This document shows, one piece after another, positions 25,901-62,421 of a DNA stretch of 64,000 nt; position 1 is the stretch's first letter, and every line of letters starts with the position of its first letter. This DNA is from Glycera tridactyla (lineage: Eukaryota), in NCBI GenBank assembly GCA_965644265.1, contig OZ286471.1, positions 49,414,001-49,478,000 on the forward strand, read 5' to 3'. Below the pieces are notes generated by a model that saw only the letters and a program-made list of their open reading frames with translations, made no database searches and was not told the DNA's origin. The position numbers and the translations under genes are program-made.

Positions 25901-28900
25901 CCATGAGCAAGTTAAATGCTGATGTACTCACTGTGATAGGTGTCACATTGGTTGATGTTCGTTAACCATGAGATTTAACTTTGTTCCAAAGCCTATTGTA
26001 TTCAAATCCTTGCCACTACAGTATCCATCATGTAACAGAAGTTTTCAGAACTTATGCCAAGCAGAGATATCGAGTCCTCAGCTGATGCCATGAGCAGGAT
26101 ATTTAAAAAAACAAAACATGCATTAATCGTAAAAATACTAAGATACCTATTGCTTAGGGCAAGTTTCTGCTCAGTAAATCTTTTCATTTGTGTCTGTCCT
26201 AATTTTGCTCTTTTGTTCATGTTATTTCTGACAGAGCTCATTCAGCAAGACAGATGGGACCAGACCAAGTCATGAAGAATTCATGGAGGCATTATCTAAA
26301 CTTGATGCCATCCTGATTCGTGCAACATACCACACCCTCATGGCTGATGCCATGCTGCGAGATGTATCATTGGACACCGCCATAGAGCGTAATACTGGAC
26401 AACCACAGGCCAACATGGTTGAGAAGTGTACCTGCCCTACCGGATATTCAGGTCTCTCTTGTGAGGTATGCACTATGTTGATCTATTTGAAGATATTTGT
26501 ACTAGCCTTTCTGTCAAGACTCTCCTTGGTCATGTGAGAAAAATGTGGGGAGGTGATATACACATGTACTGTAAAACTACCATGGAAATCAATACAGGTA
26601 AGCACTTTGAAGCCATCATGATTTAATCTCTTGAGATAGTTAGTCATGGGTTGCATGTATATTTGCAAAGGTAGGATTGCTAATCAGTAATGTGCAATGT
26701 TGGCTTTCTGATGGTAATCACTTCATAATGTTTGTTTGCCCAGACTCTAATGCATAATCCCAGAAAATGTATGCAATGAGAGACACCTTAAATGTCACCT
26801 AAAAGTGGTCTCAAAAGAGGTGGTCTCTTGTTGGGCGTATATTTGACTATGTTGAACAGAAGAGCTACCCTGCAGAAGCTGTCTCCCATCAAATGTGGTC
26901 TCCCATGGGGGGGTGTCTCTCATAACTGAATTCTCTGAAATTGATCTGAATACTCAAATGATGAAATGAGAGCAACCTTCATTGCCAATACATTTTGTCT
27001 GGAACATCTTTTCGTTTGATCAGCAGTAGTAATAGAATCGATGGTGATATCTACCGATTTCAAGCTGTTGAATCTCTTTCCTTTCCTCAGATCATATTGA
27101 TGTGTGTAGTAATATGAATCGATTTGTTGTAGGAGTGTGCCCCTGGTTACACCCTCAGTTCAAGTGGCACCTGCACACAAGGAGGTAAGTGATGGCCTTA
27201 AATTCTATACATTCAGCTCCCAGTTCTCTATTTTACACTCTATTGCTCACTTTGTATTTGTAAGTGTGTATGCACATGTCTTTGTGTGTTTTTAGAAGTA
27301 ATAATATGGGAGCTCCTGATTCTGCACTTTCTTTTTCAGAAAAAAGGTGGGACAAATCTTCTAGGCCCATGCAAACTCACTTTCCTGATCCAATTACAAC
27401 AATAAGTATAAATATAAGTAAGACCTCTATTTGCACATCGGGAGAAGATTATAGTAATGCCTAAGCATATGCAGATAAGATTTTATCTGTGTGATGCATA
27501 CCACTTTGTTTCAATTAGTGGTTGAATCACATGCTTTTTCTTCTTTCAAGAACTATCGGGTAAAGTAACCTATTCATTTACTTTAAGTATCACAAGTATT
27601 AACATCTGCGGGTTGTGACATCTTTCAGTTAGAATATCTTCATATACTATAGATGAAGCTCTTCTGAATTTCTAACATCTCATAGATATCAAGCATGATG
27701 TTTCAAGCTCGGACATACAGCCTGCTTACAAATTGGAAACTGAAAGCCATCATAGAGATTGGCCTCTCCTTATGGCTATATGCTGTGGAGTGTTTTGATC
27801 AGAGGTTAAATGAGCTCTTTTGATAATCTCGTGTTCATAGACTGAAAACAAGCATTCACATCTCTTTACTATTTAAGACATAAAATGTATCTTGTCGTTG
27901 ATATCTGGACAAAATGTCATGATTGGTAGATCAGAGTGAATGTGATATTTGAATGATAGCTGGTACCGTTGACTCTATTCAGATGGTACTGGCTCACCAT
28001 CCTCTACTGAAATTCCTTCAACAACTGTGGAACTACCAACACCGTGTGCACCTCATGAGTATGAGTGTCAAAATAGTTTATGCATTCCTGCTGAACTTGT
28101 ATGTGACCTCCATGATCACTGTGGTGACAATTCTGATGAGCTAGATTGCGAGGAGCAAGAGGAGGAGGAGGGTGAGCGATCTATTTAAGGATCGCTTTGC
28201 TGTAGGAATTCCCCCAGGATATACATAAATATACATCTGTATTGTCTCCTGTCCTTCCGCTCTTGCCTGTCCCATAACTACCATTCCAATCTCATTAGTA
28301 TGAAGTTGGCATTTATCCTGGCATATAAGTCAACCTGTTGAATAAGTCAACCCCCTGATTTCACCTTGCAAAGTATGGATTCTGCTAAATTCTTGCATTT
28401 AAGATGACCCTGATATTCTTGTAAGATTTGGCATGGCAAGTCATGATCAGCAATAAGATCCATCAAATCCCTTTTGCCTGCATACTCCGATAAAACTTGT
28501 CACGAGTGACCCCCTGACTAGCTACCATCTCTGGCATTTTCCTGTGTCTTGCAGACTAGGGCAATGCCATCAACATTTGTGACATTGGCTTTTCTCAGGG
28601 TTTGATGAAGCTCAGGATGGTGACCTACCCAAGGATGTTTGTGTCTACTAGATAATTTCATGATGTTCTTGGAGAAAATGTCTTGATTCTCTCAAAGATG
28701 ATTATGAACCATTCAAGTGAAATTGATACATTTGTTTGCATTGGCACTATTCATCAATCCTCGTTTGTATTTTGACATTTGGAGGTATATGATGATTGGT
28801 GGATTTCATTGATAGTCAATCTCACATTTATGTCCAGCCTTTCATTTTTGGCTCATATTCTGGTCTGAGATATACAATAAGATAAACCATCTGTATGGTA

Positions 28901-31900
28901 TTCTATTCATTGACAGTTAAAAAAACGTATCCCGGCAGTAATCAAACGTCTTGTCCTAGGTGTTCATGTGCCCTTTGTAGATTGTCATATGACTTATTTA
29001 ATAAGACTTCATGCTTTTTGACATGTACACAAGGAGCTCCTTCCTATTTTCACCTTTCCATGGCCTCATTGCAATGTATCTCAGTTGAAACTCCATTTCA
29101 TGCCAATATTTAAGGTTTGGCCCATGCCTACACCTCATATTAAATCTCAATCCATGATTTATTTTTTCATCTTGCATATTATTACCTCACATAAATTTCC
29201 TCTTGAGTAGATTCCAACTATTGCTTCTCAAATCCAGTATGTTGAACTGCTTTGTTTCTCTCCCTCAACTTATTTTGAATCTTTTCCACCACTGGATGAT
29301 TGCTGATTGTCCATTGTGTGAAGATGTTCTCCAGGTCCTTGTTTTGTATGCATTCAGTGTATTGATATCTCAGGCTCCCTCATGTTTGTTACAAAATCCC
29401 AATCATTTGAGAGACTTAATAATGATGAGACATTTTCAGAATTTGGCTGATGAGTTTTATTGCAGGCATAGCACTGTTAGCTTTGGGAATTTGATGCCAG
29501 GGTCTGAGTGATTTGAATAATTTGGAAGTGAGACATCATTGATAAACTGGCTTACAACAAGAAACAAGCTGTCCTGTAAGAAAAATGTTCCTTGCACAGT
29601 ATTTTTCTGTTATATATGCCTTTCTAGTAAGTTTAATACCAAAAACAGAATAAAGTCTAATGACGTAAGAAGTTCACATATAAGAATTAAGTCTGTTCCT
29701 CCCATGTTCATGGCTGACAAGATTGTTCAGGATATGAAATGGATCCAGAACACTCCATGTATACTCACAAGTTATTGAACCTCCACAGTTTTACTCATGT
29801 ATTGATGACTCACATTGCTTTTTTTCATTCTACTGTTTTTATAGTGAGTAAGCACAGCATCCCATCAAGGATGATTTTATTTGTTCCTTGAATATACTTT
29901 CACCACAACACATGACTGAGAAAAACAGATCTTTCCATTGAAACAATGAATACATATACTTTCCTCTCTGAAAATCCTAGCCAGTTGACTAGAGCTATAT
30001 ATGTAATATAAAATTTGATGCCTGTTTGATTATTCCAATTTCCGACTATGTCAATGGAGTAATTTCTTATATTGGATTTTTTTAAGAGTAATTAGTGGAT
30101 TGCTGTGTCTTCTTTTTCTATATAGTCATTTCATTCACCATTCATTTCATTTGTTGAGACAAAGAATTGCCTCTCTCAAGAATGTGAAAATATCCTCATT
30201 TCATGTATTTACCACCCATATGTCTGATGTTGCCTATATTGAGTTCGATAAATGTTGCCTATCATTTGGTATAATAATTGATTCTGAATGAGGTCATGCT
30301 GTCATTGGGTAATCTTGTTTGTTGTATATCCTTCCCTTTTCTAGGACCAACAGAACCACCAGCACAGTGTCTGTATTACCAGTATCGATGTGATAATGGG
30401 CTCTGTATTGACGCCCGTGTGGTTTGTAATTCATACGATGATTGCGGAGATGGCTCAGATGAAAAACGATGCGGTGAGCATCCTAGTCAAGGCTGCACAC
30501 TTTGCATCCAGAATATAAACTCTATGTCAGCTGGAACTGTGATGAGAAGAAAAGACCACCCTAATTTCTCCAATATGTGACAACTCGTAACAAGTATGAG
30601 TTCATGGTATTATATTTCTCTCCTAAATTGGATTCACTAGCTTGTGTATCCATCCATTTCCGGTTGAACACCAATCCTGCAATTTCAGCTAAATTTTTAC
30701 TACCACTCTACTCACATGGATGCCATTCCTGGAGATGTAGCAATGCTCACGCATCCTATGTAGAATATGGTTTTCTCTGAACCGCAGGCACATGCCGAAA
30801 GCATCTCACAACTGCTTTCACCAACAAGTAGTCCCTAAGTAAAACCAGTGACTTCTGTGAATTGTCGTAATTTGGCTAACTCTCATTTCTTTTGACAGCC
30901 ATGTTGCTCTCCATGACTTTGTATTCAATCTGATCCTAACTTATTTGATGTATCACATTGATGAAAACATGGATAAAAACCAAGATGAGTAATTGGCATC
31001 TATGAGCTGCAAGAATTCTCGATATCTATCTTTGACTGAAGTAGATAATCACGCCGAGTTGAAGTGCCTGCACTAGATCCAGATGTCCCAATTTCACAGC
31101 ACTCAAATTCACTATTCTGGTAGAAATGACTGCCCTGCATTCTCTGCCATTTATCTCCAGTTTGTCAGTCACATTGGGCTAATTAGGTGGGTCTTTGACA
31201 TGATCACAATCTTTGCTGACAGAAGTTAGCTCTAACCTAGTCAAGTTCTCACTACCATTGATTTCTTTCTTTTCCATGATCTCCTTAATCAAGGCTCACA
31301 CTCAGGCATCAACAGATTTCTCTGTATCTATGATGATGATTTTCCATTTGAGATTGTTATATGGTTGCATCTTCCTCTCTGAAGGCTAATGCAGGTGCTG
31401 GAACTGTAACTACACTCACCACATCCTCAATATCTTCATTGGTATTGCTGAACAATAATATTGTCAAATGTCAGAAAGACATTGTATTTTCATGTTGGAG
31501 CATTTTCCTATCTGAATTGGAAGTCAATGGTCGACATGTCGCTCATATTGACTGTTTTTAGCAGTGATCAATGATCTTAAAGAAGAATGGAATTTCCATC
31601 CAAATTCATGTGCTCTCTTTGCTCATGCACCGGCACATCTATTCAGCTGTATGCAACCTACATACTCATGTCAGCTACATGTATGTGGTTTAAATCTTTC
31701 CAACACGATGATCAACATCAGCACTTGTAAAAAGAGGGAGGTGAACTATATATTATCTTGGTAGTGATTTATTCTCACTTATTGACTGATACCCGTCTCT
31801 TATTCTCTTCTGACTGCTCAAGAATTTTTCATTATCTGATTTTTTCATCTGTATTGAAGATTCAAACCGGCATTTCAAATTCATCATCCCTTTTATTCTT

Positions 31901-52900: not shown

Positions 52901-53229
52901 TGTGGAAAATCCATTTGTGGGATTATATTCCCAACGTCATCGCAATATAGTGATACAAAATCACATCACTGATACAAGTGCACTCTACAAATACCTGTCT
53001 ATCCTATTTATCACTTGTTATACTCCTGCCCAAACAAAGTTTGGAAGGGGGTTCAGAAAAAAAGAGGTTTTTGGATCTGTGTGTTTGGTTGTATGTAACT
53101 TTGTAATTCTTTGAGACGTCCAAAATGGACAACAATCGGTAAGGTGTAAGGACTCTCACACCCCCTTGGCTTTCTTTCAATGTTATGTGAGATTCTTTGG
53201 TAATAGACAATGCCTTCCCATTGCACACA

Positions 53230-53266
<37 letters not shown>

Positions 53267-56200
53267 CCCCCTCACTCACACGCATGCACACACATAGTCA
53301 AACCTGCCAGAGAGACTGCCTCTCTATGAAGGTCACCCTGAGCTGCGACTGTGATAGTATTTTCACCGGTGAATGCCACCTGTCTATGAAGGCCACTTTT
53401 TGGTGTGACCAAAGGTAGTCTTATCACAGATTGGTCTGCACCTTGGCCATATTGCGTACATTCCTAGTGTCAATATGGCGACAGGCATATTTTCAGTCAC
53501 ATCTGACAAAGCTGTAGTTTCCTCAGCAAATACATGCAGGCATGGCATGGGTACACAAATCCTTTGAAAAGATGGCAAATCAGAAGCCCTACACTGAATG
53601 GGACTGCATTTAAACAGACTGGAATCATCAGTTGTATCACACTCCAGTCTACATAATGTAAACAAATGGAATGAATAGGGTATACAAGATGAGTGCAACA
53701 TTCAATGAAATTCATCCATTTCTGCTGAATGTATGAACATCCTCACTAGTGAATTGGATGATAATACTCGGTGGAGAGATTGGTCAAATGTGTATCATCA
53801 ATGGTAGCATAAGTCTGAGCTCCATCTTTTAAGTCGCATCCTACTCTTGTGACAGGAGAGCCACCTATTGAACCATCAACACCAGCACCAAGTTGTCAGT
53901 ACTATGAGATGCAGTGTGACAATGGGAACTGTGTTGATGAACGTCGAGCATGTGATGGGCAGGATGACTGTGGAGATGGCAGTGATGAGAGGGGCTGTGG
54001 TGAGCAATGCTTTCCAGGTTCTAGCACCACCAGCAAATATGTTTCATTCACACCCTTGAAAATCGAAAAAATATGATCNNNNNNNNNNNNNNNNNNNNNN
54101 NNNNNNNNNNNNNNNNNNNNNNNNNNNNNNNNNNNNNNNNNNNNNNNNNNNNNNNNNNNNNNNNNNNNNNNNNNNNNNNNNNNNNNNNNNNNNNNNNNNN
54201 NNNNNNNNNNNNNNNNNNNNNNNNNNNNNNNNNNNNNNNNNNNNNNNNNNNNNNNNNNNNNNNNNNNNNNNNNNNNNNNNNNNNNNNNNNNNNNNNNNNN
54301 NNNNNNNNNNNNNNNNTATACGTGCTCTACACATGATGGAATGCTATTAGACTTATCTGTAAACCAAAGTCATTCAATTCACTAACTCATGAAGAACTAA
54401 ATTTCTCAATCAATAGTCCTCAGCGATATCCCAGATTTGCAGAATCTGGTATTTAAATGAAATATCATATTTTGCCTTCATGAAACAATGGTGAAAATTT
54501 ATATTGTATCAGATGGAGAGCCAACAGAAGGGCCACAATGTCAGTACTATGAGATGAGATGTGATAATGGATTTTGTATCGATGAGCGTCGAAAATGTGA
54601 TGGAAGTGATGACTGTGGTGATGGCAGCGATGAACAGGACTGCCGTAAGCAATACTAGTTAAGACTGATGTATCTGAATCTGGAATCTTTTGTTTAGATG
54701 ATTGGTGTAAGCAACATTCAGAGAAAGTTAGTATTTGCGAACAAGAAATTCGAATACGCAATAGATCAGTCTACTCTGTGTGAAATATATGTTAGCCAGT
54801 AGATTCCTCTTCTTACTAAACAGGCAAGCTGATTTCCATGAAATATGAATAAATTACTATATTTTGGCTTTTTTTTTCATTCATACTGTTTCCTCAAAGA
54901 AATTTTATTTTTGATGAAGCATTCAAAGCAGATCATAATTGTTCAATATCCACCCATTATTTCACCTATCTGGTGGTACGGGGGCAGACGAATCACTGCG
55001 TAAGGGTTCTAATCATGGTTTTCGCTAAGTAGGTGTCCTTGATATGGGACAAGTGATGACCACAAAAACCCAACAGTCACAAAAGCTGATTGCAACTTGA
55101 GGCATGGGCTCAATTCTGACATGAGATAGAGAGAAAGCCCATATCCTTTTCGTGCAAACCCAGAATAAGACACACAAAATGGGATTATGAATTGAGTTTG
55201 TCAAAGTTGATGTCAGGAGAGACAAGGTTTGGCCAGGATTGACCATTTTGCTATGCACAGTGTCAGGGTTTTCATGCTCCTTGCTTGTTCCGCATTAGAA
55301 CCCATATGTATTGATTCACCTGCCAATGGACAGATGGGAATGATGGGTAGGAATTAAGCTAGTAGAAACTATTCAGTGCTATTGTGAGAACTGCAAGGCT
55401 TTCCACTACTAAGAGCTGAATCAAAACATGCTACATGTGAATTTAAATCCTGATGAGAACAATTATCACACCGCATAATGCTCATATCATGATGTGGATG
55501 TACTATACATACCAGCTGGACGAACCACTCCAACACCAACAGTTGAATGTGAATGGTATGAGGTACCATGTAACAATGGGAAATGCATCGACAGCCGACA
55601 AGAATGTGATGGAAACGATGATTGTGGTGATGGCACAGATGAGAGCAACTGTGGTGAGCAGCAATCAATTGTTACTATCAGTCAAGTAAAAATGCAAACA
55701 CTCATTACCTTTCTTAAACTGAGCTGCTTCATGCTGCCTTGAATCTCTTGAGAGACTCAGGTATGTAAATGACTATCAATAGCAGTTATTGCTGAAAAAT
55801 GTCTACGAACTTTCTATTTGGAGATAAAAAAAATGCATACAACATACCATAAAAGCACTATGACTATCAATGATTGTATTTATGAGTGATGGAAGTGCTG
55901 ACAAGGTATAGTGGTGAAAACATACTCTGATTGGCTGTCAGGTCATGGGCATCATTTTTGGGAGATGCCAAACTTTGTAATGGTCTCACATTGCATCACT
56001 ATTATGAAGAAAACCACTATGAATTTGCCAGAAGTTCACTCCATCATTATAATCAATACATTTTTTTAAAACAAAACAGACTCATTTTATACACCCATGA
56101 GATATCAAATCTCTGCTGATGTCGATCCTCATGATTGATGCCAATCCTCGTATCATCGTTCTGCTCCAAAATGATATATGTCAATTATGGATATTTCTGA

Positions 56201-59200
56201 CTGATATCCCTTTACTTTGAGATTTCATATGGCATGGTGATTCATCATAAGATTCATATAAACCACATGAAATACCAATTATTTCTATGATACGTCAGCA
56301 CTTCAGAGCTTTAGATTTTCTGAGAGTTGGGTGGACCCATGTGGCCCATGAACTGGAAATACGGGTCATAACTAAAGATTGATGAGCCAACCATTGTTAA
56401 TCATTGGTTAATGGAGACAAAATTGCTGGGCCAGTGGACCCATAGTAGGAGATATTGATGGGTTGAAAGGGCAAAAACGTGCTGACCAACAATCTGAAGC
56501 TCTTCTCATTTATTAAGATGCAAGACACTTTTTTGGCCTATACAGCTCAATCCCATATTTGCTTCATCTCAGATGGCACTCCAACAGAACCAACAACAGA
56601 AAAACCACACATTCACACTTGTGCAAGTGACGAGTTCACCTGCAGCAATGGACGGTGTGTGAATGAACAGCACAGGTGTGACTCGTTTGATGATTGTGGA
56701 GACAATTCTGATGAGCAAGGGTGTGGTAAGCAATCTTATGCTTAACATCAATCGAATAATTGCCCAGCAATTAAGGATCCCTCTCCTGCATGCTGTGTGA
56801 GCATATGGAATAGAATAAGAAAAAGCCACATTCACATTCATGATCTTGGACTTGAACTTGAATAACTTCTTGAATCTGACATTAGTACTTATGGAGAAGT
56901 TTCAGAATCCTTCCTGGCTCCTGAAGCATAGATGATATTTTTTAGTGGAACATTACTGCAGAGACTTACTCAAACCTGCCATGCTGATCGGAGATATACA
57001 ATGTTTTACAGAAAGTCAAAAGATATGCAGAAAGTAATATGATGCGATCTCCTGCAGTAGACCATTGATGTTCAAGCTGAGAGCCTTTTGTCTACTGGCG
57101 AATTCTATCGTTGCTGTCTGTCTTGACTCAACCATCTGATTGAATGCCTAAAGGCATCCATTGTCCAACCATCAAATTGTTTAAGTGAGACCTCTATCAT
57201 GTAATATGCCCAACAGCATTCAGCCATGGCCATATGCATTTGGTAGTGCAATCATCAAGATTTTTGAGAATTACTTCAGAATTGATGGTTTGCTCTGGAA
57301 TGAACATGGAAGAATCAATCTATCCTATAAAAGCAAAAAGTTTGATAAGCCATTGGATTTTGTGACATTGGAAATTGAAGTATTCTTTTGAGCCACAGTA
57401 TTCTGTTATACCTCAACTCTTCAAATGTGTCTGAAATTTCCATTACAGAGTGGAGATACTTTTATTGCTTTCTTAGATAAGAATTTATGTGTGATACTAG
57501 CATGCCTTACAGACATTAATTTTGCTGGATGAAGGAGATATGATATGTTAATTGATCCATTACATTCACTTGCATGGTTATTTACATTGGTACACCTATC
57601 TCTGGTAAAGGTAATACCATTATCCCATCTATGTACGATGGAGTGATGGACCATAATATAAGCCAAGAAATATTGGATTTCTTATATGGATCCTTAATAG
57701 TTAAGCACACATTGAAGTTAGAACACATATTATATTTAAGACACAGATCTGCCACCAACTTCACTGCTAAATCTTATCTATAGTTACTTGTGTGTGACCA
57801 GTAGGATATTCTAGGATGATTATTGTATACCAATTGTTTGCTGGACACTTTGTACTTGTCAGGGCATGCCAAGTCTAAGTATGGAAGTCACCTATTTCAT
57901 CCTGCCACAGATACTTTCTGTACTGATTTTTTTGACATCTGTGTTGACGAGGATACTGTGCAAGTTCAATGCAGCACCACCATTCATAGTTGCATGTTTT
58001 CAATTGAGCTCCTATCAAGTCGGTTCACATCATATCTACAGGCTCGAATAGTTGGTTTGTGATCACAGTGATGTATTCATGAACAATATATTTGTGAAAC
58101 ATTGTGTAGTGTCATATAGGTTGAATTTCTGTGAGATAGGAATCGGTGACATGCATTTCCTTCTTTCTTACTAGTAGGTGAGCCTACAACGTCAGTGCAT
58201 CCAAGTAGCCACTGTCCTTTCTACCAGTTTCGGTGTAACAGTGGCGTATGTGTAGATGAGCATCTAAGATGTAACAATCATATAGACTGCCCGGATGGTT
58301 CAGATGAAAAAGATTGTGGTGAGCTGGATGTTTTCAGCATCCCTCTGCCAAATGCTGCTCAATTCATGCATGATGTTGCATGTTCAAGCTATCTCACTGC
58401 TTGACAGCATATCTTTCCAAATGACTAAATCATCACAGTCTTGTTGTGTTATCAGTGCAGCTGAACCTCCAGTCCATGTCCCCCTGCCCTTCTAATTTGG
58501 ATATGATACTAGTTAGAGGTTCGATGTTGATAATATGATGGAATCTCTGTTTATCAAATTTACAAAGACAAGACCAGTTAAACATAATCCATCAATTCTA
58601 TTGCAAAATCAACGGACAATATGGCATGCACCAGCTCTAATTAGCTGAATAAGGCTGTATGTTGGCTAAAATATATAGGAACCATCAGGACCCATGGTGT
58701 ATATTTTTGGTAGCAAGTGCCAAATGTTGGTAGCCTATAAGAAATTGTCAATTACAGCTCTCATAATTTATGGGGCCACTGGCTACTAAAGTAGCAATTT
58801 AGAGCCCCGCTGAATGCAGATCATCTCCCCCATATTTTGCATATGGTTTCTTTTGAAGAATACCAGTGATGTACGAATGTTCCTGCAGACCTATTCGGTT
58901 TCTTGATCACTGATCCCACTACCTGAATCGATCACGTACCCGTGCTATGTATCTGAATGTTCAGATTCTCATTGTCAGCATCTCACCGATCTGCGTCAAC
59001 CTGACTGCCATCTCATCGTTACCCTCCCATCTCAAAGCTGCTGTCAGAATTTTGCCAGATTTTTTTGCTTCTAGCAATAAGTCAAGCCAAGCAATTCAAG
59101 TTATATATGTCATGGCGTGGTTGGATGAGGTCGTCAGTGATGATACATAGAATGGTTGCTTTCATGTGAACTTATTCACTTTGTGTTCAATCTAAGTAGG

Positions 59201-61501
59201 TTTTCTGTATGATTGACTTTTTGAGTGTGAATGAATGTGATTTGAGAGAGACAGATGAGTGTGTGTGTGTACGCATGTGTGTGCCTGCATGCGAGCATCC
59301 ATGCGTGTGTTGTGTATGATGGATATGATGAGTATTTTGAGATGCCAATTGTTTTCCATGGTATTCCATTGCTGAAGTTTAACACAGAGTCAAACATGCT
59401 CATGAGACCACCTCTCTAAGAAGAGCAACCTGAGCCGGAATGTGATGATGTTTGCAACAGTAAATTACCTCTCCATAAAAGCCACTTGCCTACAATGACT
59501 GCTTTTTATGCAACTGAAAGTGGCCTTTATGGACAGGTTTGACTGTAATGCCAAACTTAGGTATTTAAGCTTAACCTGACAGTACAGGATCCTTCTTGAC
59601 ATAGGAATTGAAACATTGTCATGGTGTTCAGTGATTTATCTACAAATCAAACAGATATAATGAGTCCCACAATAAAATCAATGAGTCCCGGTGTTACGCA
59701 AACAAAATCCTGACATTGACAGGTATGTCTGTATGCTTTAGTTACAGATGTACTGAGGTAGTAGTTATTGACAGAATGCAGTGACAGTTTTAAGGCCAAT
59801 CATAACAGAGAAAATTATATTGAGAACTAGGCCTGTGATGTGGGGGGATATTTGGCAGCTGGTGTAGTGGTCAGATTCGGATGCATCCACTATCAAAATA
59901 AACGCTTCCAGTGGGATGCAGGTGCTATGAGAGCAATGAGTCCAGGCAGGCTGAGATGAGTCTGAGACTCGGGATGCAGGTGTAGATAAATCACTGCGGT
60001 GTTACTATATAGCAAGAAACCATGGGTTGTTGGCCTGACAAGTTATACACCATTAGTTATGGTGTATAAGTGGGATAATCAATAGAAACATAACAGGTAG
60101 AGTATAACTGTTATGTCAATACCTCATGTTTCTCGCCTGTATACCATGAATTTTCATCTAAATAATGATGAAATTGCTGGGAAAAGGACAATCGTGCATA
60201 TCGTCCATGCCACATCACCAGGGGCCATCTCACTGGTTTTCATTTTTCAGGATGATCTACACTCACATATCACTGTATGTGAATGACATTTCCATGCTTG
60301 TTTTTCATGCAAATGATTCAGGCTGAGTCATGTCAAGAGAAGATGATATATCTTAATTTTTCATCTCATTTAAGCATCTATATTAGAGTCCTAAGAAAGA
60401 TAAACCTGACAAAAGCAGTGAAATTATGTGACTTTTTTGCATATTGGGAGTTGTCCGTCAGGCATGTAAATGAAATGCCACCAGTGACAACGCGGAGAGA
60501 ACTGGGATAGTCACGCTATTCTACATGCGATTCACGCTCCCCCTCTGAATATTCATGGGAATAGTGGCATCTGCCTCCTGACTGCTCAAATACAGGAGGA
60601 AGTGAGAGCTGGGTGGCGCCAAGATTGACGTCGGTAGTAGAAAAGACAAGGGCGAGTCTTGTGACTGTGCATTATGATGTAGACATGTGCTAATGGTCAC
60701 TTATATTCCACACCCGTATATTCAAGGCATACTAGCACTGATTGTGGTTTATTAGTTTATTTGGATCATTGTTTGGTGGAATCTTTTCATCAAAGTGATC
60801 ATGAGATTGTGATATGGAATTGAATTGATATTCTGTTGCAGCGTAGCAGAAATGCTTTCCCCATAATTTTTTCACACATCATGGAGGTGTTTGGCGAATG
60901 TTTTCTCGGTCTGTTGAACTGAACACCCTGCTGGTCTCAAATGACCCATCATATCTCAAGGTGCCATGAAGATATTTGTGGATGACCAGGGGTGTTAGGG
61001 GTCCGCATGATGATGGACAGTTGTAGAAGTGCCTGCCAGCACGGATTTAATGCCATCCTCATAAGTGAGCATGTGAAACACCAGAATTCATACAAATGTC
61101 AGACAAAGTTTACCTCATTTATCAGCTACCAAAATAGTCTTTGTAACCTTTGCAAAGGAAAAATTGATGTTTCTCGATGAAATGTTGAAATCAAGGACGA
61201 TGCATGAATGCCCTTTTTGCCAGTTTTAATACTCTTCATGGGTACATATTGACTGTGTACGAGGTGAGATATGAGATGAGATCAGATGATTATGTCTATT
61301 GAGGTGTAGTCTCATTTGATGACCTGTCAGTTTGTGCTTCATTTGCAGTAACTGAAACCCCTGGCGGAGTGACAGATGCACCATCACATGCGACATGTCA
61401 GAGTGATGAGTTCACTTGTGATAATGGCATATGCATAGATAAGTCACTTTACTGTGATGGCAAGGTACATTGTGGGGATGGTTCTGATGAGCGAGACTGT
61501 G
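342..61501 (+). CDS. HSPG2: Perlecan / basement-membrane heparan sulfate proteoglycan core protein, partial multi-exon gene (5' and 3' ends outside window)
   Basis: Manually spliced domain order Ig-LDLa x3-Ig-(LE/L4) x3, the perlecan domain II-III architecture. It is followed in compatible phase by an LDLa cassette array. Membership of the array in the same gene is inferred from phase continuity; no terminal exon was recognised in between. Confidence 0.88.
967..1101 (+). CDS. HSPG2: Exon: LDLa (domain II)
   Basis: cag|...|gtgagt, 135 nt; [44 protein letters not shown]. Confidence 0.92.
1533..1652 (+). CDS. HSPG2: Exon: LDLa (domain II)
   Basis: 120 nt; [39 protein letters not shown]. Confidence 0.93.
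2196..2327 (+). CDS. HSPG2: Exon: LDLa (domain II)
   Basis: 132 nt; [43 protein letters not shown]. Confidence 0.93.
2765..2929 (+). CDS. HSPG2: Exon: Ig domain N-terminal half
   Basis: 165 nt; [54 protein letters not shown]. Confidence 0.93.
3661..3783 (+). CDS. HSPG2: Exon: Ig domain C-terminal half
   Basis: 123 nt; [40 protein letters not shown]. Confidence 0.92.
4174..4298 (+). CDS. HSPG2: Exon: laminin-EGF first part (domain III-1)
   Basis: [41 protein letters not shown]. Confidence 0.9.
4907..5086 (+). CDS. HSPG2: Exon: laminin IV (L4-1)
   Basis: 180 nt; [16 protein letters not shown]...[14 protein letters not shown]. Confidence 0.88.
5153..5525 (+). mobile_element. Helentron/DINE-like non-autonomous element
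   Basis: TTTTTAT-polyC...GGGGGGCATACTGG followed by a (CTGTCCGT) microsatellite and a short 3' palindrome, a layout typical of HINE/DINE-1 elements; boundaries approximate. Confidence 0.5.
5621..5691. repeat. (TG)n microsatellite
   Basis: Direct read. Confidence 0.97.
5838..5924 (+). CDS. HSPG2: Exon: L4-1
   Basis: 87 nt; [29 protein letters not shown]. Confidence 0.88.
6002..6495. mobile_element. Tc1/mariner-type MITE family A, copy 1 (494 bp)
   Basis: TA TSD, about 30-bp imperfect TIR CAGTCG..CGCC..TTTTT.TGTGGCA; homologous to 37543-38036. Confidence 0.82.
6881..6964 (+). CDS. HSPG2: Exon: L4-1
   Basis: 84 nt; [28 protein letters not shown]. Confidence 0.86.
7666..7802 (+). CDS. HSPG2: Exon: L4-1 (contains RGD)
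   Basis: 137 nt; [45 protein letters not shown]. Confidence 0.9.
8213..8251. repeat. (ACCA)n microsatellite
   Basis: Direct read. Confidence 0.93.
8422..8533 (+). CDS. HSPG2: Exon: L4-1 end / LE
   Basis: 112 nt; [37 protein letters not shown]. Confidence 0.92.
9157..9270 (+). CDS. HSPG2: Exon: laminin-EGF
   Basis: 114 nt; [38 protein letters not shown]. Confidence 0.93.
9733..9875. mobile_element. 143-bp foldback MITE
   Basis: Perfect 19-bp IR ATTGGGCCCATTCGACTGG/CCAGTCGAATGGGCCCAAT plus internal 13-bp IR CTTCACGAAAAAT/ATTTTTCGTGAAG; superfamily unclear. Confidence 0.75.
9994..10121 (+). CDS. HSPG2: Exon: laminin-EGF
   Basis: 128 nt; [42 protein letters not shown]. Confidence 0.93.
10930..11069. 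mobile_element. MITE family B-like copy
   Basis: TA|CAGTGAACCTGTC ... GGTGGTCTC ... GCAGATTCGACTT|TA (degenerate). Confidence 0.6.
11125..11270 (+). CDS. HSPG2: Exon: laminin-EGF
   Basis: 146 nt; [48 protein letters not shown]. Confidence 0.93.
12390..12481 (+). CDS. HSPG2: Exon: laminin-EGF
   Basis: 92 nt; [30 protein letters not shown]. Confidence 0.9.
13275..13415 (+). CDS. HSPG2: Exon: laminin-EGF
   Basis: 141 nt; [47 protein letters not shown]. Confidence 0.92.
13562..13731. mobile_element. MITE family B-like copy
   Basis: TA|CAGTGAAACCTG ... AGATTTCATTG|TA. Confidence 0.62.
13918..13990. repeat. (GT)n microsatellite
   Basis: Direct read. Confidence 0.97.
14068..14247 (+). CDS. HSPG2: Exon: L4-2
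   Basis: 180 nt; [15 protein letters not shown]...[15 protein letters not shown]. Confidence 0.92.
15095..15187 (+). CDS. HSPG2: Exon: L4-2
   Basis: 93 nt; [31 protein letters not shown]. Confidence 0.92.
15655..15738 (+). CDS. HSPG2: Exon: L4-2
   Basis: 84 nt; [28 protein letters not shown]. Confidence 0.88.
16195..16313 (+). CDS. HSPG2: Exon: L4-2
   Basis: 119 nt; [39 protein letters not shown]. Confidence 0.93.
17059..17170 (+). CDS. HSPG2: Exon: L4-2 end / LE
   Basis: 112 nt; [37 protein letters not shown]. Confidence 0.93.
17548..17724. mobile_element. Short MITE family B (CAGT.AAACCTGT TIR, TA TSD)
   Basis: TA|CAGTAAAACCTGTCTATAGTG ... CACTATAGCAGGTTTTACTG|TA. Confidence 0.8.
17879..17992 (+). 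CDS. HSPG2: Exon: laminin-EGF
   Basis: 114 nt; [38 protein letters not shown]. Confidence 0.94.
18602..18729 (+). CDS. HSPG2: Exon: laminin-EGF
   Basis: 128 nt; [42 protein letters not shown]. Confidence 0.93.
19247..19333 (+). CDS. HSPG2: Exon: laminin-EGF
   Basis: 87 nt; [28 protein letters not shown]. Confidence 0.92.
19769..19857 (+). CDS. HSPG2: Exon: laminin-EGF plus linker
   Basis: 89 nt; [29 protein letters not shown], donor gtcagt. Confidence 0.88.
20221..20396. mobile_element. MITE family B-like copy; 3' part tandemly duplicated
   Basis: TA|CAGTCAAACCTGTC ... GACAGGTTTCACT. Confidence 0.7.
20311..20617. repeat. Two-copy 154-bp tandem duplication
   Basis: ATGTCAATAGAGAAGAGCCG...GATGTACATCTCAATTT.ATGGTCATG repeated from 20311 and 20465. 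Confidence 0.88.
20720..20805 (+). CDS. HSPG2: Exon: laminin-EGF
   Basis: 86 nt; [28 protein letters not shown]. Confidence 0.9.
21098..21213 (-). repeat. Dispersed repeat, inverted relative to the copy near 36909-37005
   Basis: Shared GTCAAGATTC.TTCAA.CTTGGCTGGGC..CCAGGTCTCC.TCCTTC core; boundaries approximate. Confidence 0.65.
21463..21603 (+). CDS. HSPG2: Exon: laminin-EGF
   Basis: 141 nt; [47 protein letters not shown]. Confidence 0.93.
22225..22410 (+). CDS. HSPG2: Exon: L4-3
   Basis: 186 nt; [15 protein letters not shown]...[13 protein letters not shown]. Confidence 0.9.
22429..24342. mobile_element. Non-autonomous piggyBac-like element, 1914 bp
   Basis: TTAA TSD (22425-22428, 24343-24346); perfect 14-bp TIR CCCTTTACTGCATA; subterminal GTGCATGAAA repeats at both ends; no transposase ORF. 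Confidence 0.85.
24771..24866 (+). CDS. HSPG2: Exon: L4-3
   Basis: 96 nt; [32 protein letters not shown]. Confidence 0.92.
25385..25468 (+). CDS. HSPG2: Exon: L4-3
   Basis: 84 nt; [28 protein letters not shown] (same size and phase as paralogous exons in repeats 1 and 2). Confidence 0.82.
26235..26465 (+). CDS. HSPG2: Exon: L4-3 end / LE
   Basis: 231 nt; [32 protein letters not shown]...[16 protein letters not shown]. Confidence 0.93.
27133..27184 (+). CDS. HSPG2: Exon: short LE-closing exon, ends in phase 1
   Basis: tag|...|gtaagt, 52 nt; [17 protein letters not shown]. Confidence 0.85.
27983..28171 (+). CDS. HSPG2: Array cassette A1: T/P linker + LDLa + acidic tail
   Basis: 189 nt, phase 1-1; [62 protein letters not shown]. 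Confidence 0.87.
28172..28196 (+). promoter_or_regulatory. Putative 5' splice-site stem-loop of A1
   Basis: gtg AGCGATC tatttaag GATCGCT. Confidence 0.5.
30345..30473 (+). CDS. HSPG2: Array cassette A2: LDLa
   Basis: 129 nt; [42 protein letters not shown]. Confidence 0.87.
30474..30500 (+). promoter_or_regulatory. Putative 5' splice-site stem-loop of A2
   Basis: GTG a GCA t CCT agtca AGG c TGC a CAC. Confidence 0.5.
33388..33597 (+). CDS. HSPG2: Array cassette A3: long linker + LDLa
   Basis: 210 nt; [69 protein letters not shown]. Confidence 0.87.
34959..35099 (+). CDS. HSPG2: Array cassette A4: LDLa
   Basis: 141 nt; [46 protein letters not shown]. Confidence 0.88.
36524..36649 (+). CDS. 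HSPG2: Array cassette A5: LDLa
   Basis: 126 nt; [41 protein letters not shown]. Confidence 0.88.
36909..37005 (+). repeat. Dispersed repeat, partner of 21098-21213
   Basis: Same core in the opposite orientation. Confidence 0.65.
37543..38036. mobile_element. MITE family A, copy 2 (494 bp)
   Basis: Same TIRs, TA flanks and internal sequence (TTGTTTATTGCCGTGAC...GTCAGAAC.GTCACGTA) as 6002-6495. Confidence 0.8.
39784..39918 (+). CDS. HSPG2: Array cassette A6: LDLa (AAG acceptor)
   Basis: 135 nt; [44 protein letters not shown]; 5' boundary less certain. Confidence 0.82.
42168..42287 (+). CDS. HSPG2: Array cassette A7: LDLa
   Basis: 120 nt; [39 protein letters not shown]. Confidence 0.87.
42768..43193. 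repeat. Minisatellite, about 62-bp unit, about 7 copies
   Basis: Unit TGAGCTGT.C.AGTGCATCAAGTGAAGG.ATATTGGTGGTGCAGATAGTCATTTGTCCACTG. Confidence 0.9.
43198..43286 (+). pseudogene. Dead LDLa cassette (pseudo-exon) cut by a TTAA element
   Basis: ctag|tg ttt aca tgt...: [28 protein letters not shown]. Aligns to CxYYExxC..C..D..DC with Cys3 replaced by Ser (agt); stop TAA lies in the TTAA insertion site; possible remnant (EYVDC) after 45603. Confidence 0.68.
43910..45471 (+). mobile_element. 5'-truncated non-LTR retrotransposon (CR1/L2-like LINE)
   Basis: Stop-free RT frame ([10 protein letters not shown]...[19 protein letters not shown]...LFADDT...KYLGIILD), a 3' UTR with AATAAA and an (AAATC)n tail; ATCTCTT at both junctions. 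Confidence 0.9.
43926..44978 (+). CDS. LINE reverse transcriptase, C-terminal fragment
   Basis: 350-aa ORF with RT motifs PQG and FADD; the ATG is internal to a truncated frame. Confidence 0.88.
   Translation: MSRYGANANCVKWFTSYLKDRMCTVKVNGVTSGERGIACGVPQGSILGPLLFSIYVNDFTHYMRGPSVNLFADDTAILVSDRTPERLQGKLENALSIASKWLNRNKLSLNIKKTQVMVFGSRQQVRRCKLNVTLNDVNINQTKTFKYLGIILDETLSFADHAEYIRAKTAGRVSVLGRLRGVLSKETSLMLYRTLILPVFDYCDIVYDSLGMVAASKLQKVQNKAFRIVTKSERYTRTSQIHSELHMPFLDCRRQYHTLIHVNKILNGSLPVQYTPLCTYIEPIHSYSTRLNEKPYVNAVRPMLRIAEGSFAYRGGKLWNEYVSQPDGFESTVPKLFKEKLKSFIHFSNM
46673..46819 (+). CDS. HSPG2: Array cassette A8: LDLa (core type)
   Basis: 147 nt; [48 protein letters not shown]. Confidence 0.89.
46820..46850 (+). 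promoter_or_regulatory. Putative 5' splice-site stem-loop of A8
   Basis: g TGAG CAAC ACT agtta AGT t GTTG gt CTCA. Confidence 0.55.
47589..47720 (+). CDS. HSPG2: Array cassette A9: LDLa
   Basis: 132 nt; [43 protein letters not shown]. Confidence 0.89.
48321..48467 (+). CDS. HSPG2: Array cassette A10: LDLa
   Basis: 147 nt; [48 protein letters not shown]. Confidence 0.89.
49289..49435 (+). CDS. HSPG2: Array cassette A11: LDLa
   Basis: 147 nt; [48 protein letters not shown]. Confidence 0.89.
50762..50908 (+). CDS. HSPG2: Array cassette A12: LDLa
   Basis: 147 nt; [48 protein letters not shown]. Confidence 0.89.
51044..51177. other. Assembly gap (N) inside the array
   Basis: Run of N. Confidence 0.99.
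51684..51830 (+). CDS. HSPG2: Array cassette A13: LDLa
   Basis: 147 nt; [48 protein letters not shown]. Confidence 0.89.
52688..52852 (+). CDS. HSPG2: Array cassette A14: LDLa
   Basis: 165 nt; [54 protein letters not shown]. Confidence 0.89.
53224..53263. repeat. (CA)n microsatellite
   Basis: Direct read. Confidence 0.93.
53856..53999 (+). CDS. HSPG2: Array cassette A15: LDLa
   Basis: 144 nt; [47 protein letters not shown]. Confidence 0.89.
54079..54316. other. Assembly gap (N) inside the array
   Basis: Run of N. Confidence 0.99.
54513..54644 (+). CDS. HSPG2: Array cassette A16: LDLa
   Basis: 132 nt; [43 protein letters not shown]. Confidence 0.89.
55516..55653 (+). CDS. HSPG2: Array cassette A17: LDLa
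   Basis: 138 nt; [45 protein letters not shown]. Confidence 0.88.
56573..56725 (+). CDS. HSPG2: Array cassette A18: LDLa
   Basis: 153 nt; [50 protein letters not shown]. Confidence 0.88.
58175..58318 (+). CDS. HSPG2: Array cassette A19: LDLa (TAGTAG tandem acceptor; alternative start 58178)
   Basis: 144/141 nt; [47 protein letters not shown]. Confidence 0.87.
59387..59545. mobile_element. MITE family B-like copy
   Basis: Degenerate GAGTCAAACATG ... GACAGGTTTGACTG|TA. Confidence 0.6.
61349..61501 (+). CDS. HSPG2: Array cassette A20: LDLa
   Basis: 153 nt; [50 protein letters not shown]. Confidence 0.88.
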
Positions 61502-61525
61502 GTAAGCGATCTTAGTTAAGATCGC
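61502..61525 (+). promoter_or_regulatory. Putative 5' splice-site stem-loop of A20
   Basis: gtaaGCGATCTT agtt AAGATCGC: perfect 8-bp stem containing TAGTTAAG. Function is inferred. Confidence 0.6.
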
Positions 61526-62300
61526 ACCCAACATGATTCCACAACCTAGTTAAGAATAAATGATTCCTAGATAAGATTCTTCAGGGATCATCAGTGAACA
61601 GATGAATGATAGTATAATTTCTCTGTCTTAGTATTTCCCCATCTGACTGATGGTATCATGACCCTACCACTTGATTATATTCTGTATTCATTCCTCTCAT
61701 ACACCCATTCATCAGTAATTTATTTAATCAAAATCTTATATGTGAATACTATAGCTCAGAGAAAATTTGCTCTCACCTTAACTCTATAAGAATTATAGCT
61801 CATGGGGCACAATATATATCCTTCCCACCCAGCTTTCATATCTAGATCAATGTAAGTTCTTGGATCTGGACACGATGTTTACTCAAAATGTAGTGTTATT
61901 TCTCTTCTGTGATATTACAATCATTATCTTAGTCACAGTATCTAAGATGGTCAATCTCTATCATACATTGAGATTGATACATGAGAAAAATGTATTCTGG
62001 TATCATGCCCAGTCCAGTCACATGGAGCCTCGAAGCCTGCCCAGAGACATGAGAAATGAATCACATGAAAAATGAAAAATGTTGGAATACATTGACCCTG
62101 TAATATTTGGTATTCTCATCAGAATCAAGACATGTTGTTCATCATAGATGCCATCAGTGGCCTGCTTGTATCCCTGTTTTGAAGGGAATTCTTCCTGTGT
62201 GATTCAATAATAACATTCTTCAGTGGCTATAAGCAACCCCACTAAAATTACCTCAGCATTGATGAGGATTCACTTCATGAATAATTGAAATTTCACACAG

Positions 62301-62421
62301 GGATTCCTGAAACTGATGTGCCACCGGTGGATACAGATAAACCACCTATTGTCACCAATGTTCCTCCCACCATCACTCATGAACCATCACTCCGGTGTGG
62401 GCCGTTGGAGTTCCAGTGTCA
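62301..62421 (+). pseudogene. Array cassette A21, 5' part only, interrupted after LDLa Cys2
   Basis: cag|gg att cct...: IPETDVPPVDTDKPPIVTNVPPTITHEPSLRCGPLEFQC, then foreign sequence starting TGTAAC; in-frame stop at 62438-62440. Confidence 0.72.

What the first reader, a model, noticed from the sequence alone, without database searches (positions are those of the whole stretch)
28172..61525. Conserved intronic TAGTTAAG motif and covarying stem-loop on the 5' splice sites of the cassettes
Seen: exact TAGTTAAG at intron +12..+19 after A8, A9, A11, A12, A14, A16 and A20. Variants occur after A1 (TATTTAAG), A2 (TAGTCAAG), A10 (TATTTAAC), A13 (TCGTTAAG) and A5 (TAGTCA). A20 is highly diverged in protein sequence from A8-A16 yet has the exact motif, so recent duplication alone does not explain it. 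The motif often sits in a loop closed by different complementary bases: ACT/AGT (A8), CCT/AGG (A2), TCT/AGA (A14), GCGATCTT/AAGATCGC (A20), AGCGATC/GATCGCT (A1). Copies without the motif still form donor-proximal stems: ATATCG/CGATAT (A7), TAAGCA/TGCTTA (A18), GCTGGA/TTCAGC (A19), CCTGT/ATAGG (A6), AGCAA/TTGTT (A17), GATCG/CGATC (A3). About 12/20 have a clear stem by eye; A4, A5, A9, A10, A12, A13, A15 and A16 are weak. Inference: a shared RNA-structure or RNA-binding-protein switch that masks U1 pairing and controls cassette inclusion.
Basis: partly seen in the sequence, partly recalled or inferred. Interest (0 to 1): 0.92.

Follow-up and report, generated by a model that had tools for sequence, protein, structure and literature searches.

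The report
Conserved intron motif after LDLa exons
Twenty tandem LDL-receptor-type exons of a perlecan-like gene each end in an unusually weak splice donor, most followed within 60 bases by a conserved TAGTTAAG-like element that looks like a protein-binding splicing control site, while the proposed shared covarying stem-loop is not there.

Summary
The motif is real. TAGTTAAG occurs 12 times, all on the + strand, against 1.2 expected. It sits exactly at intron +12 after A8, A9, A11, A12, A14, A16 and A20, with the listed variants after A1, A2, A5, A10 and A13.

It is more than recent duplication:
- In A20 and A16 the 8-mer is a conserved island between diverged flanks.
- Six of the 11 introns without a +11/+12 site carry a copy at +24 to +43.
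- No copy lies at +61 to +200, after 20 upstream donors of the same gene, or after 20 LDLa donors of a snail perlecan.
- A separate metagenome contig holds the same exon type, donor and motif.
- 18 of 20 donors read GTRAGC, with C at +6, which is a weak donor.

The covarying stem-loop is not supported. RNAalifold finds no pairs. Only A1 and A20 form significant hairpins, and they use the same GCGATC stem. No docking complement exists.

My best reading (about 0.5) is a single-stranded intronic splicing regulator paired with deliberately weak donors. The closest analogue is the hnRNP A1 silencer CUAGUUAG downstream of the +6C donor of human IKBKAP exon 20. Whether these exons are cassettes is untested. 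Both assembly gaps lie inside introns.

The parts
28045..61501 (+). Array of 20 single-exon LDL-receptor class A modules (A1-A20), all phase 1-1, lying after the laminin-type domain III of a perlecan-like gene. Donors at 28172, 30474, 33598, 35100, 36650, 39919, 42288, 46820, 47721, 48468, 49436, 50909, 51831, 52853, 54000, 54645, 55654, 56726, 58319 and 61502.
   Evidence: Six-Cys pattern scan; donors and phases; perlecan identity from homologues.
46714..54018 (+). Homogenised core A8-A15. Exons are 83-96% identical. Similarity runs from the acceptor region to intron +19 and stops there. The introns are otherwise not alignable.
   Evidence: third codon positions 0.82 identical, +7..+19 0.69, +20..+32 0.29 (random level).
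28182..28189 (+). A1 motif variant TATTTAAG at +11, in the loop of a 7-bp hairpin (arms 28175-28181 and 28190-28196). It supplies an in-frame TAA at +15.
   Evidence: z -3.05.
30484..30491 (+). A2 variant TAGTCAAG at +11.
33622..33629 (+). A3 displaced copy CACTTAAG at +25.
35138..35145 (+). A4 displaced copy TACTTAAG at +39. A4 also keeps an in-frame TAG at +12.
42311..42329 (+). A7 pair: TAATTAAG at +24 and exact TAGTTAAG at +35.
46831..46838 (+). A8 exact motif at +12.
47732..47739 (+). A9 exact motif at +12.
48479..48499 (+). A10 degenerate TATTTAAC at +12 and TATTCAAG at +25.
49447..49472 (+). A11 exact motif at +12 and TAGTTGAG at +30.
50920..50945 (+). A12 two exact copies, at +12 and +30. 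By eye they look like a local 18-nt tandem duplication.
51842..51849 (+). A13 variant TCGTTAAG at +12.
52864..52887 (+). A14 exact motif at +12 and TAGTCAAG at +28. By eye they look like a 16-nt tandem duplication.
54656..54663 (+). A16 exact motif at +12. Its exon is only 76-77% identical to the core, but +7..+19 is 80% identical on average (92% against A8).
55679..55686 (+). A17 displaced copy CAGTCAAG at +26.
56768..56775 (+). A18 displaced copy CAATTAAG at +43.
61506..61525 (+). A20 hairpin (8 bp, arms GCGATCTT / AAGATCGC) with the exact motif at +12 (61513-61520) forming its loop and upper stem.
   Evidence: z -4.19.
61547..61554 (+). A20 second exact copy at +46.

Best explanation
TAGTTAAG (more loosely YANTYAAG) is an intronic splicing regulatory element that works as a single-stranded binding site for a sequence-specific RNA-binding protein. 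It lies 10-45 nt downstream of each LDLa exon's donor. The donor itself is kept weak: GTRAGC with C at +6, after the exon end TGT-G.

The exon, weak donor and element were duplicated together as the array grew. They have since been maintained by selection, and in the A8-A15 core also by gene conversion.

Inferred mechanism: the bound factor tunes U1 snRNP use of the weak donor, so each in-frame (phase 1-1) LDLa module can be included or skipped on its own. The most likely factor is an hnRNP A/B-type protein that reads UAG. A STAR/KH protein that reads UUAA is an alternative.

What is shown and what is not:
- Shown: the conservation, the enrichment, the positional restriction and the weak donors.
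- Inferred: that a protein binds, which protein it is, and the direction of the effect.
- Untested: that the exons are alternatively spliced.
For: 1) ENRICHMENT AND STRAND. 12 exact copies, all on the + strand, against 1.2 expected. Copies with at most 1 mismatch at +20..+100 number 9 against 0.5 expected. YANTYAAG gives 9 sites at +7..+19, 10 at +20..+60 and 0 at +61..+200, against a background of 0.00036 per nt.

2) SPECIFICITY. 0 of 20 upstream donors of the same gene and 0 of 20 LDLa donors of Bulinus perlecan carry it.

3) CONSERVED ISLAND. A20 against A8 or A16: exon thirds 0.60-0.74 identical, the spacer +7..+11 differs, the motif is 8/8, and +20..+30 is 0.18. A16 against the core: third codon positions 0.58 but +7..+19 0.80.

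4) APPARENT TURNOVER. Six of the 11 introns without a +11/+12 site have one at +24..+43. An unbiased Gibbs search on 13 semi-independent introns recovers the same motif. The best seed hits 7 of 13 introns, against typically 4 and at most 6 in 40 shuffles.

5) INDEPENDENT COPY. Contig L002 carries a CQYYEM-type exon, a GTAAGC donor and TAGTTAAG at +11 behind a different spacer. Its homology to the window again ends at +19, and it has no hairpin.

6) WEAK DONORS. +6 is C in 18 of 20 array donors, against 3 of 20 upstream donors and 0 of 20 in Bulinus.

7) ACCESSIBILITY. The motif is predicted to be less paired than the same positions in control donors (0.51 vs 0.61, p 0.03).

8) PRECEDENT. In human IKBKAP intron 20 (+11..+36), CUAGUUAG binds hnRNP A1 and represses exon 20 only when the donor is weakened by +6T>C. 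RBM24 acts through +13..+29 (PMC6125618, PMC5558909).

9) LDLa MODULES AS CASSETTES ELSEWHERE. Annotated spider perlecan isoforms differ by single LDLa modules of 37-40 residues.
Against: - There are no expression or isoform data for this gene. Its own protein was not found in the databases, so cassette use is not shown.
- No orthologous locus from a sister species could be fetched, so conservation rests on paralogues and on one contig of unknown origin.
- The copies share ancestry. The nominal p-values overstate independence, and YANTYAAG was defined from these same sequences.
- The best-conserved core in old copies is TTAAG rather than UAG, which fits hnRNP A1 imperfectly.
- By eye, the second copies after A12 and A14 (and perhaps A11) look like local tandem duplications, which a mutational bias could also produce. 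Other notes on this genome report donor-end tandem arrays.
- A5, A6, A15 and A19 lack the element.
Confidence: 0.5

Rival explanations
1. Passenger of concerted evolution. The 19 intron bases simply lie inside the block that gene conversion homogenises between the LDLa exons. The motif has no function of its own, and the extra copies come from slippage-type local duplication.
For: In A8-A15 the exons are 83-96% identical, with third positions at 0.82, while the introns are unalignable. Homology stops at +19 in every copy and in L002. The second copies after A12 and A14 look, by eye, like 16-18 nt tandem duplications. Other notes on this genome describe tandem arrays of exon ends with their donors.
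Against: In A20 and A16 the 8-mer is an island. The spacer just upstream and synonymous sites a few bases into the exon have diverged, so no recent conversion tract spans it. Displaced copies at +24..+43 sit in non-homologous context in A3, A4, A7, A17 and A18. A block edge at +19 rather than +6 itself suggests constraint. L002 keeps the motif behind a different spacer.
Confidence: 0.2
2. Intron-retention safeguard. The element is kept because it places a stop codon in frame right after a phase-1 exon (TAG when it sits at +12, TAA when it sits at +11), so unspliced transcripts end early or are degraded by nonsense-mediated decay.
For: The first in-frame stop is TAG at +12 in 9 of 20 introns (A4, A7, A8, A9, A11, A12, A14, A16, A20), TAA at +15 in A1 and TAA at +18 in A18. 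In L002 the motif at +11 also gives an in-frame TAA at +15 (worked out from the sequence). A4 and A7 keep TAG at +12 without TTAAG.
Against: Any stop would serve, and AT-rich introns supply one within tens of codons anyway, so this does not explain an 8-mer. It also does not explain the TTAAG half, the second and displaced copies that follow an earlier stop, or the +6C donors. A2 and A13 carry the motif variant but no early stop (first stops at +105 and +57).
Confidence: 0.12
3. Structure switch. Donor-proximal hairpins present the motif in a loop and mask the 5' splice site, as in MAPT exon 10 or SMN2 TSL2.
For: A1 and A20, the first and last modules, form strong hairpins overlapping +4/+5 to +25 (z -3.05 and -4.19). 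The raw MFE of the 20 donors is lower than that of upstream donors (-7.6 vs -4.1 kcal/mol, p 0.0006).
Against: RNAalifold finds no pairs. z-scores are only marginally below controls (p about 0.05), so the MFE gap is largely compositional. The A1 and A20 stems are the same sequence, so there is no compensatory change. The 5' splice site pairing probability equals that of controls. L002 has the motif without any hairpin (z +1.0).
Confidence: 0.1
4. Dscam-type competing base-pairing. The motif is a selector that pairs with a docking site elsewhere in the pre-mRNA.
For: Tandem homologous exons each carry a shared intronic sequence, which is the general layout of docking/selector systems.
Against: The complement CTTAACTA does not occur on the transcribed strand of the 64-kb window. 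GU-tolerant complements number 47 against 60 +/- 12.5 for shuffled motifs. The exons differ in linker length and nothing suggests mutual exclusivity.
Confidence: 0.03

Closest known systems
hnRNP A1-dependent intronic splicing silencer of human IKBKAP/ELP1 exon 20 (intron 20 +11..+36, core CUAGUUAG), which also overlaps the RBM24-responsive element at +13..+29 (PMC6125618, PMC5558909)
   Same: A UAG-containing element a dozen or so bases downstream of a 5' splice site whose +6 is C (GTAAGC). The core differs from CUAGUUAAG by one base. The element matters because the donor is weak.
   Different: There it is a single site in one human exon, exposed by a disease mutation. Here it is a native, repeated feature of 15-16 of 20 tandem exons in an invertebrate gene. 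The best-conserved part here is TTAAG, not UAG. No binding or splicing data exist for this locus.
SMN2 ISS-N1 and other hnRNP A/B silencers just downstream of 5' splice sites
   Same: Position (+10 to about +25), single-stranded AG-containing motifs, and often two motifs side by side.
   Different: Different sequence, and not propagated through an exon array.
Dscam1 / 14-3-3xi / Mhc docking-selector systems for tandem duplicated exons
   Same: Tandem duplicated exons each flanked by a shared intronic sequence.
   Different: No docking complement. The element lies downstream of the donor and is 8 nt long. No evidence of mutual exclusivity.
5' splice-site stem-loops (MAPT exon 10, SMN2 TSL2)
   Same: A1 and A20 have a stable hairpin that overlaps the end of the donor.
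   Different: Only 2 of 20 copies have one. There is no covariation, and the motif persists without a hairpin.
Alternatively spliced LDLa modules of invertebrate perlecan (Drosophila trol; spider, tick and bee isoform sets)
   Same: Same protein family. Single LDLa modules are skipped in annotated spider isoforms.
   Different: In those genes the LDLa array lies N-terminal to domain III. Here it lies after domain III. The snail gene's LDLa donors have neither +6C nor the motif.

Membership tests
Intronic splicing silencer/enhancer next to a weak 5' splice site (hnRNP A/B-type, IKBKAP ISS-like) | Short single-stranded motif within about 10-60 nt downstream of the donor, enriched over background and confined to that zone | tested here: met
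   19 YANTYAAG sites at +7..+60 and 0 at +61..+200; 0 in 40 control donors. Lower pairing probability than controls.
Intronic splicing silencer/enhancer next to a weak 5' splice site (hnRNP A/B-type, IKBKAP ISS-like) | Sub-optimal donor that makes the exon dependent on the element | tested here: met
   +6 is C in 18 of 20 donors, against 3 of 20 upstream and 0 of 20 in Bulinus. Exon positions -3..-1 read GTG in 17 of 20 (AGG, ATG and GCC in A1, A3 and A16) rather than CAG.
Intronic splicing silencer/enhancer next to a weak 5' splice site (hnRNP A/B-type, IKBKAP ISS-like) | UAG (YAG) core recognised by hnRNP A1-type RRMs | tested here: inconclusive
   UAG is present in the exact copies and in A2, A4, A5 and A7. 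It is replaced (UAU, UAC, UAA, CAC, CAA) in A1, A3, A4, A7 and A18 copies that keep TTAAG.
Intronic splicing silencer/enhancer next to a weak 5' splice site (hnRNP A/B-type, IKBKAP ISS-like) | Binding of the protein, and a change in exon inclusion when the motif is mutated | not testable with these tools
   Needs pull-down or CLIP and minigenes. No transcript data for this gene were reachable.
Dscam-type docking/selector competing RNA pairing | A docking sequence complementary to every selector | tested here: not met
   CTTAACTA is absent on the + strand. GU-tolerant complements number 47 against 60 +/- 12.5 for shuffled motifs.
Dscam-type docking/selector competing RNA pairing | Mutually exclusive use of the tandem exons | not testable with these tools
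   No transcripts available.
5' splice-site masking stem-loop | Stable stem including the donor, above shuffled and control donors | tested here: not met
   Only A1 and A20 have z below -2. Mean z is about -0.6 against -0.01 and -0.11 in controls, p about 0.05-0.06. 5' splice site pairing probability 0.69 vs 0.62, p 0.32.
5' splice-site masking stem-loop | Compensatory (covarying) base changes across copies | tested here: not met
   RNAalifold finds 0 pairs. The A1 and A20 stems share the same GCGATC arms.
Gene-conversion-homogenised exon block | Synonymous-site identity far above that of flanking intron, with shared sharp boundaries | tested here: met
   Third positions 0.82 against +20..+32 at 0.29 within A8-A15. 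BLAST finds no intron homology apart from the ends and a few short internal matches.
Known structured RNA family (Rfam) | Match to a curated covariance model | tested here: not met
   No match at gathering threshold in the whole window.

The most novel reading that the evidence does not exclude
A self-propagating splice-control module, made of the LDLa exon, a deliberately weak GTRAGC donor and the UAGUUAAG element, has been copied about 20 times. It is kept by selection, with sites replaced when lost. One trans-acting factor could then dial the number of LDLa modules in perlecan up or down. That would be a module-count control working by per-exon silencing rather than by Dscam-style RNA pairing. 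The A1 and A20 hairpins at the two ends of the array could act as specially gated boundary exons.
Probability: 0.3. Interest if true: 0.6.

Novelty: new member of a known kind. Interest (0 to 1): 0.45.

Why it matters
If the element controls inclusion, this locus would be a natural, 20-fold replicated example of the pairing of a weak +6C donor with a downstream UAG-type element. That pairing is otherwise known mainly from a human disease allele (IKBKAP/ELP1). The locus would also show how a regulatory unit travels with its exon during tandem duplication and survives through replacement of lost sites.

It gives a simple, testable route to variable numbers of ligand-binding LDLa modules in a basement-membrane proteoglycan.

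If it does not control inclusion, the locus is still a clean case of a conversion-homogenised exon block whose edge lies 19 nt into the intron.

Tried and rejected
- DOCKING SITE. The exact complement is absent, and GU-tolerant complements are not enriched. Rejected.
- CONSENSUS STRUCTURE. RNAalifold on -5..+40 of all 20 donors gave 0 pairs. Rfam gave no family.
- FOLDING ENERGY AGAINST CONTROLS. Marginal. Pairing-probability profiles showed no masking of the donor.
- ORTHOLOGUES.
  - A laminin-B exon search found perlecans at only about 50-60% identity: amphioxus, molluscs, spiders.
  - P0001 is not on record.
  - The scallop gene is too long for DNA retrieval.
  - A protein search with the A20 open reading frame was blank.
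  - A donor-plus-motif DNA pattern in metagenomes was blank.
  - The window's own protein and its isoforms were not seen in the top 120 hits.
- SNAIL LOCUS L001. It has neither the motif nor +6C. Its LDLa array is not orthologous, since it lies before domain III, so it serves as a control rather than a conservation test.
- PSEUDO-EXON AT 43206-43283. Its 3' end and donor could not be found beyond the inserted element, so it gave no neutral comparison.
- LITERATURE STRING SEARCH for the 8-mer. Only primers and unrelated oligonucleotides came up.
- A FIRST GIBBS SIGNIFICANCE RUN timed out. It was replaced by a seed-count test.
- SEQUENCE JUST AFTER 288 LDLa-PATTERN STRETCHES IN 80 METAGENOME LOCI (many of them still coding). 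Only L002 is related. Three AT-rich annelid-like loci with TTAAG strings are at chance level (chance level estimated from the background density).

Full report
WHAT THE LOCUS IS

The + strand of the window carries a perlecan-like gene. Its order is an Ig exon, three LDLa modules (996-2326), an Ig domain, a laminin-B/laminin-EGF domain III up to about 26.5 kb, and then 20 LDLa modules, each on its own exon (first Cys at 28045 to 61396).

The nearest proteins are basement-membrane heparan sulfate proteoglycan (perlecan/trol) from amphioxus, molluscs and spiders, at about 50-65% identity per exon. All 20 exons end in phase 1, usually TGT-G|GT. In the other invertebrate perlecans I inspected, the long LDLa array lies before the three conserved LDLa modules (snail locus L001). 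The array here, after domain III, therefore looks lineage-specific.

THE ASSEMBLY GAPS

Gap 51044-51177 begins 136 nt into the intron after A12. Gap 54079-54316 begins 80 nt into the intron after A15. Both are intronic and far from any donor, motif or exon, so frame is not at issue. What they hide is unknown, and further modules are possible. I did not try to fill them.

THE MOTIF IS REAL

- TAGTTAAG occurs 12 times, always on the + strand. Shuffles give 1.21 on average and at most 4.
- Seven copies sit exactly at intron +12..+19: A8, A9, A11, A12, A14, A16 and A20.
- Second exact copies lie at A7 +35, A12 +30 and A20 +46.

IS IT ONLY SHARED ANCESTRY?

A8-A15 are 83-96% identical, and their proteins are nearly the same. 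Their introns are not alignable except at the very ends and for a few short internal matches.

In these copies similarity stops abruptly at +19. Third codon positions are 0.82 identical, +7..+19 is 0.69, and +20..+32 is 0.29, which is random level. That pattern needs concerted evolution of a block running from the acceptor region to +19. Taken alone, it would allow the motif to be a passenger.

Four things argue against a pure passenger:

1. In A16 and A20 the motif is an island. A20 against A8 or A16 has exon thirds 0.60-0.74 identical, a different spacer at +7..+11, an 8/8 motif, and 0.18 identity at +20..+30. A16 against the core has third positions at 0.58 but +7..+19 at 0.80.
2. Copies occur in non-homologous context further into the intron. 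With at most 1 mismatch there are 9 at +20..+100 against 0.5 expected. With the looser YANTYAAG there are 10 at +20..+60 and none at +61..+200. Six of the 11 introns that lack the +11/+12 site have such a displaced copy (A3, A4, A7, A10, A17, A18). That is what replacement of a selected binding site over time looks like. YANTYAAG was derived from these sequences, so its p-values are inflated. The mismatch-based count is the conservative one. A motif search blind to the pattern, run on 13 semi-independent introns, recovered the same element and beat shuffles modestly (7 of 13 against at most 6 in 40 shuffles).
3. Controls are clean. The site is absent after 20 upstream donors of the same gene and after 20 LDLa donors of the snail perlecan gene.
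4. A metagenome contig (L002) carries another CQYYEM-type LDLa exon with a GTAAGC donor and TAGTTAAG at +11 behind a different spacer, one like A2's. Its similarity to the window again ends at +19, and it also shares a repeat with the window at 80% identity. Whether it is a sister-species orthologue or an unassembled paralogue is unknown.

THE DONORS ARE UNUSUAL TOO

Position +6 is C in 18 of 20 array donors (GTRAGC). It is C in 3 of 20 upstream donors, which are mostly GTRAGT, and in 0 of 20 in the snail. With a non-consensus exon end (mostly GTG at -3..-1), these are weak U1 sites.

THE STEM-LOOP CLAIM

- A1 and A20 do form strong hairpins (z -3.05 and -4.19). Their arms are the same GCGATC sequence, and A3 shares the 5' arm. 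This is conservation, not covariation.
- The remaining stems are 3-6 bp and no better than shuffles. The mean z is about -0.6, against -0.01 for upstream donors and -0.11 for pseudo-donors, p about 0.05-0.06.
- The raw MFE is lower than for upstream donors (-7.6 vs -4.1 kcal/mol). Since the z-scores barely differ, that gap largely reflects composition.
- RNAalifold predicts no pair at all, and Rfam finds nothing.
- In partition-function folds of exon plus 75 nt of intron, the donor is not more paired than in controls (0.69 vs 0.62, p 0.32). The motif is less paired (0.51 vs 0.61, p 0.03).
- L002 has the motif and no hairpin (z +1.0).
- The docking complement CTTAACTA is absent, and GU-tolerant complements are not enriched.

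The shared-structure and Dscam-like readings are therefore not supported. A special role for the hairpins of the first and last modules remains possible.

IN-FRAME STOPS

Because the exons end in phase 1, TAG at +12 is in frame in 9 of 20 introns. The motif at +11 puts TAA in frame in A1 and in L002 (worked out from the sequence). This may be a side benefit against intron retention. It does not explain the TTAAG half, the displaced copies or the weak donors.

MOST LIKELY MECHANISM (INFERENCE)

The element is a single-stranded intronic regulatory site, read by a protein, that modulates use of a weak donor.

The closest documented case is human IKBKAP/ELP1 exon 20. An hnRNP A1-binding silencer with core CUAGUUAG at +11..+36 represses the exon only when the donor carries +6T>C, giving GTAAGC. 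RBM24 promotes U1 recruitment through +13..+29 (PMC6125618, PMC5558909). The sequence, position and donor context match closely.

The fit is not perfect. Old copies here conserve TTAAG better than UAG, so a UUAA-reading STAR/KH protein or another factor is equally open.

That single LDLa modules can be cassettes in perlecan is shown only by analogy: annotated spider isoforms differ by single modules of 37-40 residues.

VERDICT

- The covarying stem-loop is not confirmed.
- The RNA-binding-protein switch reading is plausible but untested.
- This is a new, lineage-specific member of a known kind of element, not a new kind of system.

Noticed in passing
window donors 28172-61502: 18 of 20 LDLa-array donors read GTRAGC (C at +6). 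Upstream donors of the same gene are mostly GTRAGT, and snail perlecan LDLa donors never have +6C.
   Followed up: yes
L002 (metagenome contig JAAUYI010107072.1), 700-875: A further CQYYEM-type LDLa exon with a GTAAGC donor and TAGTTAAG at +11. It is 80-90% identical to the core exons, and the homology ends at +19. It also shares an 80%-identical repeat with window 20218-20303. The host organism is unknown.
   Followed up: partly
window +20..+120 of the 20 LDLa introns: ATGATT is over-represented (11 against 1.8 expected, in 9 introns; nominal p 3.7e-6, borderline after correction for 4096 hexamers). It often reads CATGATT or TGCATGATTG. A20 shows the order [TAGTTAAG ... ATGATTCC] twice.
   Followed up: partly
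window 49447-49472, 50920-50945, 52864-52887: The motif pairs after A12 and A14 (and perhaps A11) look, by eye, like local tandem duplications of a 16-18 nt unit. Other notes on this genome report tandem arrays of exon ends with their donors, which hints at a mutational bias near donors.
   Followed up: partly
window 28045-61501 against 996-2326: The long LDLa array lies after laminin domain III. In the scallop, snail, spider, tick and bee perlecans I inspected, the array lies N-terminal to the three conserved LDLa modules.
   Followed up: partly
window 43206-43283: Degenerate LDLa pseudo-exon in the 4.4-kb intron between A7 and A8, cut off at a TTAA. Its 3' part and donor were not found on the far side of the insert.
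   Followed up: partly
window 62301-62421: A further exon encodes a Pro/Thr-rich linker and only the start of an LDLa module (CGPLEFQCH). It ends in a GTAACG donor, so it is a split module with a different exon structure from A1-A20.
   Followed up: no
window 35100-35120, 36650-36670, 39919-39941: A4, A5 and A6 share a different short element ending in ATAGG at about +13 to +21 (TAGATAGG, TAGTCATAGG, GAATAGG). This is a UAGG-type string typical of hnRNP A1 sites.
   Followed up: no
P0005, P0151-P0158 (spider perlecan isoforms): Annotated isoforms differ by the absence of single or paired LDLa modules (37-40 or 76 residues).
   Followed up: yes
L031, L037, L041 (metagenome contigs, AT-rich host DNA): In another animal, an LDLa exon is followed by GTAATTAAT... 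with TACTTAAG or TATTTAAG and TAATTAAG between +23 and +32. Judged to be at chance level in AT-rich sequence.
   Followed up: partly
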